DNA of 64,000 bases from Paragordius varius (GCA_964247055.1 OZ176053.1:558001-622000), one strand, 5' to 3'; counted from the stretch's first letter, positions 3,975 to 57,900 are shown. The notes: generated by a model not told the origin, from the letters alone. Program-made: numbers and translations.

Positions 3975-4880
3975 TTGTAAGTGCTCAGTATCAAAAAATG
4001 GCAAAATAGTGGTACATTTTTTAAATGAATTTACATTGATGCATGCTTATTCCTAAAAATATCCCCAAAATACATAAACTACCTATAAAAAGCAAAAATA
4101 TATTTCAAAAAAATCTTTAGATGTGGACTCCGAAAGTCCCAAACTTATTCGCTCCTCCGAAATGAACTATTTCCCTTAAAATAAACGCATAATGCGCGAT
4201 AAATTTTTAAATATTAAGTTTTGACATATAAAAATACTTAAATGCAAATTTTTTCAATCTAATAAAAAAAATAGTTGAAGCGCTAAATATTAGTTTGACG
4301 CATGATTGAAACGGTATAAAAAAGAATTTTTATATTTTAAAAACACTTTTTCGATATAATTCGATGAATAAACTTTAATACCTCAGAAATTCTATTCGTT
4401 TGTCTTCAAATTTATGCTAAATTATTTTGATTTTTTTACAAACTTTCAGAAAAAAATTAAAGTGGACGAACCAAGCAATGGAAATGTTATCATCTAATTA
4501 TATATTAAAATATTTATAAAATCCAAAATTTATACCGTTTTCATCATGCCTCAAACTATTAAGTGCGATTCAACATTTCGATAAATTTTGATTTAAAAAA
4601 ATTATGCATTTTTCAAAAGGGTTTTATGTCAAACTTAGTATATATTTTAAAAGACGCCTAACCCCGGCAACACAGTTTATTTAAGATAGACCATTTTACA
4701 GCAAAAAATGGGACTTTCCGAGTCCACATTTGAAAATTATTTTTAAATATAGTTTTGTTTTTATAGGTAGTTTATGACATATTTTAGTGATATTTTTTGG
4801 AATGATGCATTCATTCAAAAATTATTTAAAAAAGAGTGTGCACATTTTGCTATTTTATGATACGAATAGTACTCTAAAGC
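3975..4880. repeat. Degraded foldback palindrome of about 900 bp upstream of ATG7; a related arm lies at about 19330-19650
   Basis: Inverted blocks such as GTGGACTCCGAAAGTCCC (about 4122) / GGGACTTTCCGAGTCCAC (about 4710) and ACGCATGATTGAAACGGTATAAA / TTTATACCGTTTTCATCATGCCT. Boundaries are approximate. Confidence 0.7.
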
Positions 4881-21968: not shown

Positions 21969-24006
21969 CCATTTGCACTTAGAGAGTGTCCTTGAACACC
22001 AAGTTGGTCCTTGAACATTTGAAGTTAGTCCTTACACACTTCAAGTTGGTCCTCGGACACTTCTAGTTGGTCCTTGAACATTAGTTGGTCCCTGAACACT
22101 TTAAGTTGGTCCTTTGACTTTTTATTTAACTTTTATCAATCAAATCGTAAATCATTCATCTAATTTATCGTTTTGTTAGGCAAATTTGAAAGATATACTT
22201 TATTTTTATAATATTTTTCTGTGTTATATGCAAATGTGATATACATACTTTGGTTATATATTATAACTTTAACCCCTTATTTGAATTGTATTATTTTTGA
22301 TATTTTTTGTGTTATATGTAAATATACAACCTTTGTTACTTGGAATTTTATTGATATAATGCAAATCATGGACAGTTAAAATTGCTATATATACACCTTA
22401 AAAAACCAAATAAAAAATTCAATTCATTTCACATTTCTTTTATTATCTCTTATCTTAAAAGATAAAATTGGTGGCCAAGACGAGTACCGAACTAATCTAA
22501 CAACTTATCTAACACAACAGTAGAACCTCCGGGTTCCAAACTCGGATGGTGGAGATAGAGCCCAAAGTGCAACAACCATGACAATGTCAATTGCCAATAT
22601 CACCAGCTTGTCCATTAAAAATTATAATGATAATACCAATTATAGCAATGGTAATAATTTTAATCGATCACAATAATACAAACCACTGAAACATTCGCAC
22701 AAGGGTTATGGGAGTATTCATGGGCCAAGCAAATGTCCCGCCTGGAACCGCAATTGCAAACGCGGAAAACCCAACCATTTCGCTAATGTAGATCAAAAAA
22801 ACACTGCCAAAAAAAATGTTCAACCGCCATTGCACTGAAAGCGAACGGGCTAATAATCTATAGCAACTTTGGAATCATTATCAACAAATGGCTGGGGAGG
22901 ACTCCCACATCATTCAACAATTGATGGATGGGTAAGTAAGATTGGCGCGGACAAACTTGTAATAAGATTGATCGGTAAGACGCCTACCTCCCCAGGCCGA
23001 GTTAAAGCTACACCTCGACGATTTCAACAATAAGAGGATGTGTCAGTTACAAAAGGACACTGTTTAGATTCGTTACAGCGCCCATAGTATATCAGTGCGC
23101 CTGGACCAGTTTCAAAGGAATGGTCTAGGGTGGCAGGCAGAGATCAAAGGAAACACGTCGACACACATAACATAGGATGTTATCTTTCAAACCAAGATTC
23201 GTCGACACACCGCCAACTTAACGACACCCACTCAAAAAAGTAGTGATGTTAGGCAAATTTGAAAGATATACTTTATTTTTATAATATTTTTCTGTGTTAT
23301 ATGCAAATGTGATATACATACTTTGGTTATATATTATAACTTTAACCCCTTATTTGAATTGTATTATTTTTGATATTTTTTGTGTTATATGTAAATATAC
23401 AACCTTTGTTACTTGGAATTTTATTGATATAATGCAAATCATGGACAGTTAAAATTGCTATATATACACCTTAAAAAACCAAATATCAAAAATAATACAA
23501 TTCAAATAAGGGGTTAAAGTTATAATATATAACCAAAGTATGTATATCACATTTGCATATAACACAGAAAAATATTATAAAAATAAAGTATATCTTTCAA
23601 ATTTGCCTAACACGTTTCTAACCTATTTCCTATCATTTAACATAAATGTTAAATCAATATCAACTTTAAATCATTGAAAAACCGTATATCTTTATTAATC
23701 TCTTAAAATTATTTTGGATATTTATAAGTATGTTTTCTGGGTTAGTATTTCAAATTTTTCATTGAAAACATTAAAAGTTAATAATTTAGTTAAATTGGAA
23801 AAAATTAGTTTGAAATAAATAAGTGGTTTTTGAGTAAATTTTTTTATTTTTAAATGAATATATAATAAATAAAGAAAATTAGGTTAAAAAATAATAAAAT
23901 AAAAAAATACATGAAAAAATTATGGTTATCAAAATTTAAAAATTTTAAGGCCAACTTGAAGTGTTCAAGGACCAATTTGAAGTGTTTAAGGACACTCTTC
24001 TAGTGA
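21969..24006. mobile_element. MITE family C (CCATTTGCAC terminus, 21-bp TTCAAGTTGGTCCTTGAACAC repeats), interrupted by the gypsy-derived element
   Basis: Left terminus TATA|CCATTTGCAC with about 7 subterminal repeats. The right arm has inverted repeats and a degraded end. The body matches the reverse complement of 56608-57064. Confidence 0.75.
22174..23612 (+). mobile_element. Non-autonomous Ty3/gypsy-derived element with identical 239-bp direct repeats and 132-bp terminal inverted repeats; 5-bp TSD CGTTT
   Basis: TG...CA ends flanked by CGTTT at 22169-22173 and 23613-23617. Direct repeats at 22174-22412 and 23247-23485. Purine tract AAAAAAGTAGTGA precedes the 3' repeat. A degenerate gag double zinc knuckle (GYGSIHGPSKCPAWNRNCKRGKPNHFANV) lies at 22704-22790, after an in-frame stop. 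23481-23612 is the reverse complement of 22174-22305. Confidence 0.85.
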
Positions 24007-24812
24007 TTATATACTACTTTTTAATGTCCATTTCGTCCTTTCCACTCAGATTACGGATGGATAAGGCAAAAAAGCAGTTTTAAACAAAATATTTTATATT
24101 TGGATGAAGAAAATTGTGGACTCGTTACCAAGGGACTCCAAGCCAACCTAATTGTCAAAATATCAGTAACAATTCTGGATAAGGAAAACTAATTTACACT
24201 CTACTAAAGCAAGGCAATATCATCTGGTTATTTTAAATAACAAGGATCTAATTTAAATAAAAATAAATAATATTATGGTATCGGATATGTTGTTATGCTG
24301 CAATCTAATTATTTTCTTATTACGTGCAAACAGATTAATCACAATATCTTTCCAGCAATTTATAGTGATAATAAGAAAATTGGAGTGTCAGGAGATATTG
24401 GCTAGTTCTAATAGATACTTTTAGTCTCTGATAACAGGTCCCGATTTTCTTCATCAGAATTCAAACAATATTGTTTCAGACCGAATATTAATCAAATTTT
24501 TAACCACCCTTAATCCAAATGAAAGGGACGATTCGCAGATTAAAAAAGAATTGGTCAGAAAAAACTGCTGGAAATCTTTTAGACGTGGCGATACTAAATT
24601 ATCTATCAATGTAAGTGTCACCCGTGTTTCTAAGGATGTCCAGTCAAGGTAATTTTTAACTTTTTTTATGGTGATCACCCCTGGAAAATTAACGGCTAAT
24701 AAAATGCTTTAAACGGTGCGTTTGGAGAATTCTTTACATAAAAGGATAAACAAATTTACGAATATCCACCCAAAATAAAATGATCCTGATACATGTCATT
24801 CATTGCCTTTTA

Positions 24813-54976: not shown

Positions 54977-57900
54977 AAAAGTTATGAGAAATTAAATTGA
55001 TTCTGGAATGTTTTATATAATTTGGTTTTAAAACAAATTTATTAGTCCCGTAAATGTGTTATTTTTTATATAAAGTTTTTTATTTAAAATAGATCAATAT
55101 ATAGTAAAAACTGAACAAAACGTAAAAATATAAAGACAAAATTTTTTTTAAAGACAACACCATACTTTGTTAAATATAATTCCATATAAATTATTTATTT
55201 ACAATTATGAAAATGTATCATTGATTGTGGTGCCAATAATATCCCCATAATTTTCAGTTTAAGACAATGAGATATATCTATAAAAAAATCAAGATTTAAA
55301 AAGTGTGTTTGTCGTTTATAAAAAAATACTTGTCTTTATATTTTTACGTTTTGTCATCCATATAATTTCAATTTTTACTGAGTATAAAAAACCCCTTATT
55401 AACACCAAATATTTCTTAATATCCAAAGTAAAAAAAGTATATCTATAAAATTTATTCACCATATTAAACTAAAAAAAAATTAAAAGTAAAAAACCTGGTA
55501 TATCTATAAAATTTATCCACAATATTAAACTAAAAAATAGCGAAAAAAAACCTGGTATATGGACATCCTCAAACTTTACAGTAATATCGTATTCTCCAGC
55601 GATCTGAGGATAGTAAGTAACCTTACAAGTCCCATCTCGATTATCTACACAATGCATTTTAGCTTCGGAGGGTCCTTCAATCGTAAGCCCGAGACCGCCT
55701 GTTCCCGCTCGACGGGTATCAACGATAAAACTACAACCTAGGGCATAAAAAATGTTTTATAGATGATAAAATTTTTAGATGTGAAATTTTTTATTAGATT
55801 TTCTACATATCATCTTAATTCATGATAAATTCAATCCAATTCATATATATAGATATATATATATATATATATAGTATAAAATGTTTTATAGAGATGATAA
55901 ATTTTTTTACAAATTGAAAACTTTTAGTTAGATTTTCTACATATAATCTTAATTAAGTAACGGCCTATTATCCACATCATAAATCCAATTAATTGAGATA
56001 ATTTTATCTTTTAATAATGTAACAAGCTACAATATTTTTATTTTTTTATGTATGGCTCACAAGGCCTCCTGCAGCCTGTTGAATATCAATAAAAAATTAC
56101 AATCTGTAAATCCTATATAGTATAAAATGTGTTATTAAATAAAGAATTTGTAAAATGTTAAAAATGTTCATAATATACCATTTACAAATCAAATTAACCC
56201 TAAAAATAAATTATGTGTTTCAAAGGTAATATAATTCCTTATTAATATGAAATATATCTTTATGGCATACTTTTATATTTATTCAATTTATTTCAATTTT
56301 AAACACACAATTTCATTTTTAAAAAATATAAAAAAATATAAGTAATTTTAATCTAAAACATAATTTATTTGAGGGTGTATATGAATGTTCGAGGGTGAAT
56401 TTGAATTGTTCAAAGGTTAATTTGAGGTGTAAATGGTATATTTAGATATTTTAATAATTAAAATATATATAGAGAATTACCCTCTTTTTCCATTTCTATG
56501 GATTCGGATTTCTCATTGTCTATATCCTTTGTGTCAGTCTTTACGACATAGCCATGTTTTAATCCCTCGCCTGATACTTTGACCTTAAATTTAAATTTAA
56601 AATTATGCCATTTGCACTTCAAGAGTGTCCTTGAACACTTCAAGTTGGTCCTTAAAATTTTTAAAGTTTGATTTAACCATAATTTTTGCGTTTATTTTTT
56701 TGTTTTCTATATTAAATATATATTTTTTATATAAAAATAAAAATTTTTATTAAAAAACCACTTTGTTTCAAACTAATTTTTTTCCAATTTAACAAAATTA
56801 TTAACTTTTAAATGTTATCAATGACAATTGTAAATAATAACCCAAAAAACTAATTTATTTTTTAATTAGGTATTAAAATCTCATAAATATACAAATTCCA
56901 AGAAATTAATAAAGATATAAGGTTTTGAAGGATTATTGATTTGAAATTTATTTAAAATAAAAGAAAATAGGTTAAAAACGATAAAATAGATGAATGATAC
57001 GATTTGATTGATAAAAGTTAAAAAAACAAAAATGTTCAAGGACCAACTCTTGAAGTGCAAATGGTATATATAAAATAAAAGTTAAAAAAACATAATTTTA
57101 ATCTTAAGCATATTCATTACTCGTGAAGCATCGAATCCATGCTTTGCATTAATGGCATACGGTTTAGGTAATATGGGTACTCCATCAAAACTGAAATCCA
57201 AATTGTATAAACCTAAGATATCACAATGATTAAAAACAATTTTATACATTAAATAAAGTGTTTAAAGGCAATTTTATAACCCTAACTAATTATAAAGAAA
57301 CATATTAATAAAATTTTGCTATAGTTTTTTTTTAATAACTAACCACAAACGCATATAATTTTTACTCGGGGGGGGGGGGGAGATATTTGATGAGAAAAAT
57401 AATTAGAGGATGAATTTAACATATACCAAGGGTGAATTAAAGGTATAAATTGTATATATACCATTTATACTCAAATTCATCTTTGAACAAATCAAATCCT
57501 TATTAAATATGTGTTTTATAAGATTAAAAATTACCTTTATTTTTTTATATTATTAAAAAATAAAATTTTGAATCAAATTATACTGAAAAAATAATAAACT
57601 AACCCATAAAGATATATTTCCTATAAATATTAATGAGTTATATTAGCTGCCTGAAAACACATAATTTATTTTTAAAGTGAATTTAAATTGTTCAAGGGTA
57701 AATTTGATGGGAAAAATAATTTAGAGGTGGGTGAATTTACCATATACTAAGGATAAATTAAAGCTATAAATTGTATTAATATTTAATAAAATATTCCAAT
57801 AAAATTCAAAATATTCTTATATAAATATAAAATAACCTTCATCCTTGGGGTTAAAATAGACAATGTATTGGCCACCATAAGTTTTATGATTATGATTTTG

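What the first reader, a model, noticed from the sequence alone, without database searches (positions are those of the whole stretch)
22169..23617. Young gypsy-derived element with both LTR-like direct repeats and long terminal inverted repeats
Seen: 1439 bp bounded by TGTTAGG...CCTAACA with a 5-bp TSD (CGTTT), two apparently identical 239-bp direct repeats, a purine tract and a degenerate gag zinc knuckle. The 3' repeat does not end like the 5' one. At microhomology AAATA it switches to a 132-bp inverted copy of its own start, so both integrated ends are the same U3-type end. The empty site is visible in the paralogous MITE at 56608-57064. Established: normal reverse transcription copies U5 from the 5' LTR and cannot produce this end; Ginger/TDD DNA transposons have gypsy-related integrases, TGT termini, long TIRs and 4-5-bp TSDs. 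Inference: this is either an aberrant template-switch product that still integrated, or a non-autonomous element mobilised as DNA by a gypsy or Ginger integrase, i.e. a snapshot of an LTR-to-TIR transition.
Basis: partly seen in the sequence, partly recalled or inferred. Interest (0 to 1): 0.8.

Follow-up and report, generated by a model that had tools for sequence, protein, structure and literature searches.

The report
Retrotransposon copy with two U3 ends
A small defective gypsy-type jumping gene in this worm genome was miscopied so that its far end became a mirror image of its near end, and it was still pasted in cleanly; it is a well-preserved one-off copying accident, not a new kind of mobile element.

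Summary
Window 22174-23612 is one 1,439-bp insertion with a perfect 5-bp duplication (CGTTT). It sits inside a MITE whose paralogue at 56608-57064 shows the empty site.

It is a non-autonomous Ty3/gypsy derivative. It has a full 294-bp 5' LTR, not 239 bp, an 18-nt primer-binding site for tRNA-Ile(AAU), decayed zinc-knuckle and RT remnants, and a purine tract. Then comes LTR nt 1-239, joined through 5 nt of microhomology (AAATA) to an inverted copy of LTR nt 132-1. Both integrated ends are therefore U3 ends.

The junction is unique in the 110-Mb assembly. Of 97 LTR starts of the family, only this one faces inward. The informative part of U3 (nt 1-155) is identical to that of a young 4,589-bp autonomous gypsy with an open gag-pol frame. 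A second unique junction removes the canonical polypurine tract.

Best reading (about 0.7): a one-off reverse-transcription accident made a cDNA with two U3 ends, and the family's integrase inserted it. Nothing supports DNA-level mobility, and a Ginger link was not tested.

A retroviral precedent exists: a Moloney MLV provirus integrated through two U3 sequences (1988, known here by title only). Earlier notes of this scan report similar capped insertions of gypsy-type elements elsewhere in this genome; I could not verify them. Interest is moderate.

The parts
21970..22173 (.). Left part of the host MITE that received the insertion. It includes a run of about 21-nt subterminal repeats at 22000-22140.
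   Evidence: Aligns with the reverse complement of the paralogue at 56608-57064. Repeats; sequence.
22169..22173 (+). Left copy of the 5-bp target-site duplication, CGTTT.
22174..22467 (+). Complete 5' LTR of 294 bp, from TGTTAGG to GATAAAA. It carries a TATA-like motif at 22386-22393 and AATAAA at 22409-22414. The part up to nt 239 counts as U3.
   Evidence: Nt 1-155, where family members differ, are identical to the LTR of the young autonomous copies L031-L034. Over the whole LTR it differs from them by one base fewer in an A run and three substitutions, all within nt 227-250. Motifs.
22469..22486 (+). Primer-binding site, an 18-nt perfect complement of the 3' end of tRNA-Ile(AAU) plus CCA. 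The match is 23 of 24 when extended.
   Evidence: tRNA-Ile(AAT) genes found by ARAGORN in L071 and L072. Sequence of L072 94-168. Pattern search.
22680..22811 (+). Decayed remnant of the nucleocapsid double zinc knuckle.
   Evidence: blastx against the autonomous ORF, residues 219-264: 30/46 identical, E 5e-12. The cysteines are partly lost.
22823..23095 (+). Decayed remnant of the N-terminal part of reverse transcriptase, with stop codons.
   Evidence: blastx against the autonomous ORF, residues 467-562: 40% identical, E 2e-9.
23234..23246 (+). Purine-rich tract (11 of 13 purines) that abuts the 3' U3. It stands where the canonical polypurine tract was lost. The deletion junction with AGT microhomology lies at 23242-23244.
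   Evidence: Other non-autonomous copies carry about 100-150 nt more here, ending in AAGGGGGAAGTGA as in the autonomous element. The junction is unique to this copy.
23247..23485 (+). 3' LTR copy cut short: nt 1-239 only, lacking the last 55 nt (predicted R and U5).
   Evidence: 239/239 identical to the 5' LTR; the first mismatch is at offset 240.
23481..23612 (-). Inverted copy of LTR nt 1-132, ending exactly at LTR nt 1 (CCTAACA on the + strand). Its first 5 nt (AAATA, 23481-23485) overlap the direct copy.
   Evidence: 132/132 complementary. As RNA the 366-nt stretch folds into a stem of at least 132 bp, -202 kcal/mol, z -33.7.
23613..23617 (+). Right copy of the 5-bp target-site duplication, CGTTT.
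23618..24007 (.). Right part of the host MITE.
56608..57064 (-). Paralogous MITE that shows the empty site, with a single CGTTT (AAACG at 56976-56980 on the + strand).

Best explanation
This is a single, very recent insertion of a non-autonomous Ty3/gypsy-derived LTR retrotransposon, about 1.5 kb in its normal form. Its complementary DNA was miscopied before integration.

Shown: the body is an ordinary retroelement, with a 5' LTR, a tRNA-Ile primer-binding site, gag and RT relics, and a purine tract.

Shown: the right-hand LTR stops at nt 239, inside the AATAAA signal and close to the predicted U3/R border. It continues, through 5 nt of microhomology, as an inverted copy of U3 nt 132 to 1.

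Inferred: during the last, strand-displacing stage of reverse transcription, the growing plus strand left its minus-strand template at nt 239. It annealed to a plus-sense U3 strand, either a displaced or a second plus-strand strong-stop DNA, whose natural 5' end is U3 nt 1. It then copied that strand to its end. This explains why the inverted arm stops exactly at the LTR terminus.

Inferred: the resulting DNA carried the U3 attachment sequence (TGTTAGG...), with CA-3' on the transferred strand, at both ends. The integrase of the matching 4.6-kb autonomous family joined both ends to a staggered cut, giving the family's usual 5-bp duplication.

The copy has no U5 at its right end and has lost its canonical polypurine tract. 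It is almost certainly a dead end for further retrotransposition.
For: - Structure and exact identities.
- One insertion event: perfect 5-bp duplication and a continuous empty site in the paralogous MITE.
- Retroelement hallmarks: an 18/18 primer-binding site for tRNA-Ile(AAU); zinc-knuckle and RT relics homologous to the autonomous ORF.
- Partner element: a 4,589-bp element with one 1,306-aa ORF holding gag, protease, RT, RNase H and integrase domains. Two copies have identical LTR pairs and two are 99.3% identical within the pair; all have 5-bp duplications. Its U3 is identical to ours at every informative site.
- About 30 normal relatives of about 1.5 kb have a 5-bp duplication wherever I read the flanks (about ten copies). 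Six have 100% identical LTR pairs, so the family was recently mobile.
- Uniqueness: the junction probe and the junction 26-mer occur once. Only 1 of 97 LTR starts is in the inward-facing arrangement. No further inverted cap of 14 nt or more exists in this family.
- A second junction private to this copy lies 2 nt upstream of the same 3' U3 block. This fits a reverse-transcription round with several template switches.
- Published background: about 20 nt of a U3 or U5 end suffices for integrase-mediated insertion (PMC7240061). Fold-back self-priming of strong-stop DNA is a known reverse-transcriptase side reaction (PMC6088434). Proviruses with one damaged LTR are common (PMC9278108). A Moloney MLV provirus integrated through two U3 sequences has been described; I know it by title only, from the reference list of PMC5778647.
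Against: - No reads were available, so the structure rests on one assembly.
- The order and polarity of the strand switches cannot be read from the product. A switch of a 132-nt nascent plus strand onto a plus-sense template at nt 239 would give the same sequence.
- The 239-nt U3 strand has no intrinsic hairpin as single-stranded DNA (z -0.2).
- Complementarity beyond the 5-nt microhomology is not better than at other TATTT sites. The choice of site is therefore not explained.
- A source copy with this body and this LTR type is absent from the assembly.
- The polypurine-tract deletion may be older than the end rearrangement.
Confidence: 0.7

Rival explanations
1. Two DNA molecules took part. 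The integrase paired the U3 end of a nearly complete cDNA with the U3 end of a second, short cDNA fragment and inserted both in one concerted reaction. The host then sealed the two broken inner ends, at LTR nt 239 and nt 132, by microhomology-mediated end joining.
For: It explains the same features: two exact U3 termini, a normal 5-bp duplication, and 5 nt of microhomology at the inner joint. Short att ends are sufficient integrase substrates (PMC7240061).
Against: It needs two independently broken cDNAs, pairing across molecules, and a repair step. It does not explain the second private junction 2 nt upstream of the same U3 block. It cannot be told from the best explanation by sequence alone.
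Confidence: 0.12
2. The rearrangement happened after integration. Either a normal element inserted and a second copy landed in inverted orientation at the very same 5-bp site, followed by a deletion between nt 239 of one LTR and nt 132 of the other. Or a replication fold-back rebuilt the 3' end.
For: Microhomology joints are also typical of replication-based rearrangements. Several other family copies carry internal deletions.
Against: The inverted arm ends exactly at LTR nt 1 and abuts an exact copy of the left duplication, and the MITE continues seamlessly. Two hits on one 5-bp site are improbable, because the duplications of the family show no strong target consensus. A fold-back in chromosomal DNA has no reason to stop at nt 1.
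Confidence: 0.05
3. The element is a mobile hybrid with terminal inverted repeats. It was cut or copied as DNA and inserted by a gypsy or Ginger-type integrase acting as a transposase.
For: It has 132-bp perfect terminal inverted repeats starting with TGT, and a 5-bp duplication. Integrases need only short end sequences.
Against: The 239/132 junction and the internal/U3 junction each occur once in 110 Mb. No other inward-facing LTR start exists among 97. There is no donor site. The arms are identical to each other and to the LTR of an active retroelement, as expected from one round of reverse transcription. Ginger-type integrases were not looked for.
Confidence: 0.03
4. The structure is an assembly artefact, such as a fold-back or chimeric read, and the real locus has a normal 3' LTR.
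For: Inverted joints with microhomology and a gap are typical of amplification chimeras (own knowledge). No reads could be inspected.
Against: An artefact would not end exactly at LTR nt 1 and then resume with the correct 5-bp duplication and the rest of the MITE. The locus lies 580 kb inside a 14.2-Mb contig.
Confidence: 0.04

Closest known systems
Moloney murine leukemia virus provirus with LTRs in inverted orientation, integrated through two U3 sequences (Colicelli and Goff, J Virol 1988;62:633; title seen in the reference list of PMC5778647; the paper itself is not held)
   Same: A reverse-transcribed element was inserted by its integrase through two U3 ends instead of one U3 and one U5 end.
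   Different: That case was a retrovirus in cell culture; further details of its structure I know only from memory. Here it is a natural, non-autonomous retrotransposon insertion. Only 132 bp of U3 is inverted, and it is joined to a truncated direct LTR by microhomology.
HIV-1 proviruses with asymmetric LTRs (PMC9278108)
   Same: An intact 5' LTR and a damaged 3' LTR arise from template switching during reverse transcription, followed by normal integration.
   Different: In the cases described there the 3' LTR deletions begin upstream of the LTR and end most often within U3. Here R and U5 are missing altogether and the right terminus is an inverted U3.
Self-priming (fold-back extension) of retroviral strong-stop DNA (PMC6088434)
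   Same: A nascent DNA strand is extended on a strand of its own polarity, which gives an inverted copy.
   Different: The described reaction concerns minus-strand strong-stop DNA and yields dead-end products. Here the product would involve plus-sense U3 and it was integrated.
Non-autonomous LTR retrotransposons (TRIM, LARD and TR-GAG types)
   Same: Short LTR elements without working pol, moved in trans by a related autonomous element. The about 30 normal relatives here fit this.
   Different: Normal members have two complete direct LTRs. This copy does not.
Ginger1/Ginger2 (TDD) DNA transposons
   Different: This element carries a primer-binding site, LTRs and RT relics. It has one copy only and no transposase, and its LTR matches a true gypsy retroelement at all but four positions (99% identical).
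DIRS-type retroelements
   Same: Retroelements with inverted terminal repeats.
   Different: By own knowledge, DIRS elements use a tyrosine recombinase and make no target-site duplication. Here there is a 5-bp duplication and the partner encodes a DDE integrase.

Membership tests
Ty3/gypsy-derived LTR retrotransposon (non-autonomous) | Two direct long terminal repeats | tested here: inconclusive
   The 5' LTR is complete at 294 bp. The 3' LTR is present only as nt 1-239, then inverted nt 132-1. About 30 relatives have two full LTRs.
Ty3/gypsy-derived LTR retrotransposon (non-autonomous) | Primer-binding site complementary to a tRNA 3' end, next to the 5' LTR | tested here: met
   22469-22486 is an 18/18 complement of tRNA-Ile(AAU) plus CCA.
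Ty3/gypsy-derived LTR retrotransposon (non-autonomous) | Polypurine tract abutting the 3' LTR | tested here: inconclusive
   The canonical tract AAGGGGGAAGTGA of the family is deleted. A tract with 11 of 13 purines, ending in the same AGTGA, abuts U3.
Ty3/gypsy-derived LTR retrotransposon (non-autonomous) | Target-site duplication of the family's length | tested here: met
   It is 5 bp here. It is also 5 bp in the 4 young autonomous copies and in the non-autonomous copies whose flanks I read, about ten.
Ty3/gypsy-derived LTR retrotransposon (non-autonomous) | Internal sequence homologous to gag/pol of an autonomous element with the domain order PR-RT-RH-IN | tested here: met
   blastx finds zinc-knuckle and RT relics. 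Pfam finds on the partner ORF gag 64-142, protease 283-375, RT 472-629, RNase H 692-825, integrase 931-1113.
Mobile TIR element (Ginger-like or integrase-mobilised DNA element) | Terminal inverted repeats and a 4-5-bp duplication | tested here: met
   132-bp perfect inverted ends and a 5-bp duplication.
Mobile TIR element (Ginger-like or integrase-mobilised DNA element) | Several copies with the same ends at different sites | tested here: not met
   The junction is unique. Only 1 of 97 LTR starts faces inward. No other cap of 14 nt or more was found.
Mobile TIR element (Ginger-like or integrase-mobilised DNA element) | A Ginger-type transposase in the genome that recognises these ends | not tested
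   No search for Ginger integrases was run. The ends match a true gypsy retroelement.
DIRS-type retroelement | No target-site duplication; tyrosine recombinase | tested here: not met
   A 5-bp duplication is present. The partner encodes an rve-type integrase.
Provirus or retroelement integrated through two U3 ends | Both termini are the U3 end of the LTR, flanked by a duplication of normal length | tested here: met
   Both ends read TGTTAGG... inward, and 132 nt are identical. The duplication is 5 bp and the empty site is shown.

The most novel reading that the evidence does not exclude
Capping a truncated cDNA with a fold-back copy of its own U3 terminus may be a recurrent salvage route in this worm's gypsy elements. 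It would regularly yield integrase-competent DNAs with terminal inverted repeats. This particular product could also matter in another way. If it is transcribed from its intact 5' LTR, through a 3' U3 whose AATAAA signal the junction destroyed, it would give a 132-bp perfect hairpin RNA. That RNA would be identical to the U3 of the active autonomous family, a natural trigger for RNA silencing of that family, comparable to Mu killer in maize. Neither transcription nor small RNAs could be examined.
Probability: 0.12. Interest if true: 0.65.

Novelty: new variant of a known kind. Interest (0 to 1): 0.4.

Why it matters
It is a clean natural record, with its empty site, showing that a retrotransposon integrase will insert a DNA whose two ends are both U3 ends. 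It also shows that a single copying error can turn an LTR element into a DNA with 132-bp terminal inverted repeats. That is the kind of step invoked when gypsy integrases and Ginger-type DNA transposons are linked. As a single dead-end copy it illustrates the step and does not show that the route was ever taken. The same copy documents a mosaic between an autonomous element's LTR and a parasitic element's body, which is evidence of co-packaging and template switching in this genome.

Tried and rejected
- I folded LTR nt 1-239 as single-stranded DNA to look for an intrinsic snap-back hairpin. There is none (z -0.2).
- I looked for extended complementarity next to the AAATA joint. It is no better than at the four other TATTT sites of the LTR. 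An apparent 22-nt extension in BLAST hits to other subfamilies is AT-rich similarity that I do not trust.
- I looked for more inverted caps in this family.
  - Extra 14-mer hits were two solo LTRs, one truncated copy with a normal 3' LTR, and ten unrelated sites. The reversed-pattern control gave five matches.
  - The truncated autonomous copy at C8:2.80 Mb (L076) has no cap.
  - The copy at C4:1.85 Mb stops at position 4110 because sequence that translates like a non-LTR reverse transcriptase follows, by my reading, not because it is capped.
  - Copies L006 and L012, with odd 3' LTRs, end normally with duplications.
Except for the two re-requested in part, those loci were not examined, and I did not fetch them by other means.
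- The first tRNA candidates for the primer-binding site were sites of another LTR family, not tRNA genes. The right tRNA-Ile genes were found afterwards.
I could not find clear termini or a duplication.
- I considered whether the A-type/N-type mosaic boundary coincides with nt 132. It does not: the diagnostic sites run to about nt 155 and the rest of U3 is uninformative.
- Autointegration was rejected on logic, because it would join U3 nt 1, not nt 132, to the target.
- The 1988 paper itself is not held.

Full report
**What is in the sequence**

The stretch 22174-23612 is 1,439 bp long. It runs from TGTTAGG to CCTAACA and is flanked by CGTTT on both sides. LTR nt 1-239 occurs twice in direct orientation, at 22174-22412 and 23247-23485, without a single difference. 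The last 132 nt (23481-23612) are the exact reverse complement of LTR nt 1-132. The direct and inverted pieces overlap by five bases, AAATA.

**One insertion event**

I removed the element and one CGTTT and aligned the joined flanks with the reverse complement of the paralogous MITE at 56608-57064. The alignment runs straight through the junction (335 of 385 aligned positions identical). The paralogue has a single CGTTT at that place. The MITE family is large, with 1,018 first-look candidates. All 40 scored copies are contiguous across the 141-nt stretch that holds the site. The whole 1,439 bp, inverted arm included, therefore entered in one integration event with a 5-bp duplication.

**What kind of element it is**

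The window's genome (G000, 110.5 Mb; earlier notes call it an AT-rich worm) holds about 30 relatives of about 1.5 kb that are 80-93% identical.

- They have two LTRs of 283-297 bp with TGTTAT...ATAACA termini, and a 5-bp duplication in every copy whose flanks I read. Six of them have 100% identical LTR pairs. This is a recently mobile non-autonomous family, called N here.
- The true LTR is thus 294-295 bp. In the window copy the 5' LTR is complete (22174-22467), and the 3' copy lacks its last 55 nt.
- One base after the 5' LTR lies an 18-nt perfect complement of the 3' end of tRNA-Ile(AAU) plus CCA, 23 of 24 when extended. Two tRNA-Ile(AAT) genes with that end were found.
- The interior holds a decayed double zinc knuckle and a decayed start of reverse transcriptase.

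**The autonomous partner**

Four copies of a 4,589-bp element (two of them with internal deletions), called A here, carry LTRs that match the window copy's U3 at every informative site.

- A has one open frame of 1,306 residues with gag, aspartic protease, RT, RNase H and integrase domains in gypsy order.
- Two copies have identical LTR pairs and two are 99.3% identical within the pair. All four have 5-bp duplications.
- The exact 25-nt LTR start of the window copy occurs only in these four elements and in the window copy itself.

**A mosaic copy**

U3 nt 1-155 of the window copy is identical to the A subfamily, whereas N copies differ at eight or more sites within nt 1-132 alone. From nt 327 on, the leader and body are of N type, for example 36/36 with L011 where A matches 31/36. 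The only differences from the A-type LTR are one base fewer in an A run and three substitutions. All four lie within LTR nt 227-250, around the breakpoint and the AATAAA signal. No other copy in the assembly combines this body with this LTR type. A recombinant made from co-packaged A and N RNAs is the simplest reading, but that is inference.

**Two private junctions**

The first is the 239/132 fold-back joint.

- A 91-nt probe across it matches full length only here.
- The 26-mer at the joint occurs once in the genome even with three mismatches allowed.

The second lies two bases upstream of the 3' U3. Compared with all other N copies, about 100-150 nt are missing, including the canonical polypurine tract shared with A. 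The joint shows 3 nt of microhomology (AGT). What abuts U3 now is a tract with 11 of 13 purines that ends in the same AGTGA. A 121-nt probe across this joint is also unique.

Both private joints bracket the same U3 block. That fits a single disorderly round of reverse transcription, although the deletion could be older.

**Where the break lies**

The LTR has a TATA-like motif at nt 213 and AATAAA at nt 236-241. The break at nt 239 is inside the poly(A) signal and close to where the U3/R border is expected. The 3' copy therefore keeps essentially U3 only. This border is predicted from motifs and has not been measured.

**Mechanism**

Normal reverse transcription ends the right LTR with U5. In the A subfamily the integrated U5 end reads GATAAAA. 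Here the right end is a second U3 end.

The only natural DNA end at U3 nt 1 is the 5' end of plus-strand DNA primed at the polypurine tract. I therefore infer the following sequence of events:

1. A growing strand switched, at AAATA/TATTT, between a minus-sense and a plus-sense U3 template.
2. It ran off at that 5' end. The most likely setting is a switch onto a displaced or second plus-strand strong-stop DNA during the strand-displacing completion of the LTRs.
3. The mirror version, in which a 132-nt nascent plus strand switches onto a plus-sense template at nt 239 and then serves as the start of a minus strand, gives the same product and cannot be excluded.
4. Either way the product had the U3 attachment sequence at both ends, and integrase joined both.

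Published work agrees with the parts of this scheme. About 20 nt of a U3 or U5 end suffices for integrase (PMC7240061). Fold-back self-priming of strong-stop DNA is a known side reaction (PMC6088434). Integrated proviruses with one damaged LTR are frequent (PMC9278108). A Moloney MLV provirus integrated through two U3 sequences was reported in 1988; I know the title from the reference list of PMC5778647, and the paper is not held.

**Rivals**

- Concerted integration of two separate cDNA fragments, followed by microhomology end joining, explains the same ends. It needs more steps and ignores the second private joint.
- A rearrangement after insertion is hard to reconcile with an inverted arm that stops exactly at LTR nt 1 next to an exact duplication.
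- An assembly artefact would not restore the duplication and the MITE.
- DNA-level mobility of the hybrid fails the copy-number test.

**Is the accident recurrent?**

In this family I found no second case.

- Among 97 LTR starts (25-nt pattern, up to three mismatches) only the window copy has an inward-facing partner.
- A 14-nt exact pattern added two solo LTRs, one truncated copy with a normal 3' LTR, and unrelated sites.
- Truncated A copies that I could read are not capped.
Two of them were re-requested in part. Caps shorter than 14 nt would also have escaped me.

Earlier notes of this scan, on other pieces of the same genome, describe the same kind of thing in gypsy-type elements. They report a palindromic fragment integrated as one unit, an element capped with an 11-nt inverted copy of its start, and a statement of at least five such insertions in one family. 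I could not locate or verify those. The one note with a usable position (L068) showed old inverted arms but no clear ends.

**Verdict**

The thing is a new natural variant of a known kind of event, aberrant cDNA integrated through two U3 ends. It is single-copy and almost certainly inert as a mobile element.

Copies were only compared.

Noticed in passing
L031 5560-5589, L032, L033, L034, L046, L047, L051, L052 (3' LTR ends); compare L045, L048, L049, L053, L054: The LTR of the autonomous family ends in GATAAAA (TG...AA) in at least eight copies, four of them checked for clean 5-bp duplications. It ends in the canonical ...AACA (TG...CA) in five others and in the non-autonomous copies. The integrase evidently accepts AA at the U5 end. 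The window copy belongs to the AA subfamily. Whether a weaker U5 end favours U3/U3 insertions is open (1 of 5 insertions with the exact TGTTAGG-type LTR start against none among the other paired-LTR elements, not significant).
   Followed up: partly
window 22834-23193 (element nt 661-1020): This part of the non-autonomous family is mostly 97-100% identical between copies (one copy drops to 92-93% in two 60-nt windows), while their LTRs and 5' interior differ by 8-15%. The conservation is uneven for a non-coding parasite. It may reflect a cis-acting constraint or recombination between subfamilies.
   Followed up: no
L044 (G000:C1:6592826-6596342): A complex rearranged locus. Two family LTRs lie in minus orientation around non-autonomous interior in plus orientation, and there is an inverted piece of the autonomous element (positions 1448-1824).
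   Followed up: no
window 22000-22140: The host MITE carries five copies of a 21-nt subterminal repeat (CAAGTTGGTCCTTGAACA-like). The paralogue at 56608-57064 has about two.
   Followed up: no
L041, L042, L043 and four more places: The same tRNA-Ile-type primer-binding-site sequence, in a variant form, recurs at seven other places. In the one I read (L041) it sits in a context that looks like another LTR family.
   Followed up: no
L080 249-420 (G000:C4:1853598-1853769): An autonomous copy stops at its position 4110. It continues into sequence that, by my own reading of the frame, resembles a non-LTR reverse transcriptase (FPTFMYGGESWTL-like), probably a nested insertion.
   Followed up: no
G000:C3:5608827-5609903, C4:8631052-8631870, C1:14875142-14876415: Three non-autonomous copies in which a truncated 5' LTR (nt 1 to about 176-193) is joined directly to interior sequence. 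These are further deletion derivatives of the family.
   Followed up: no
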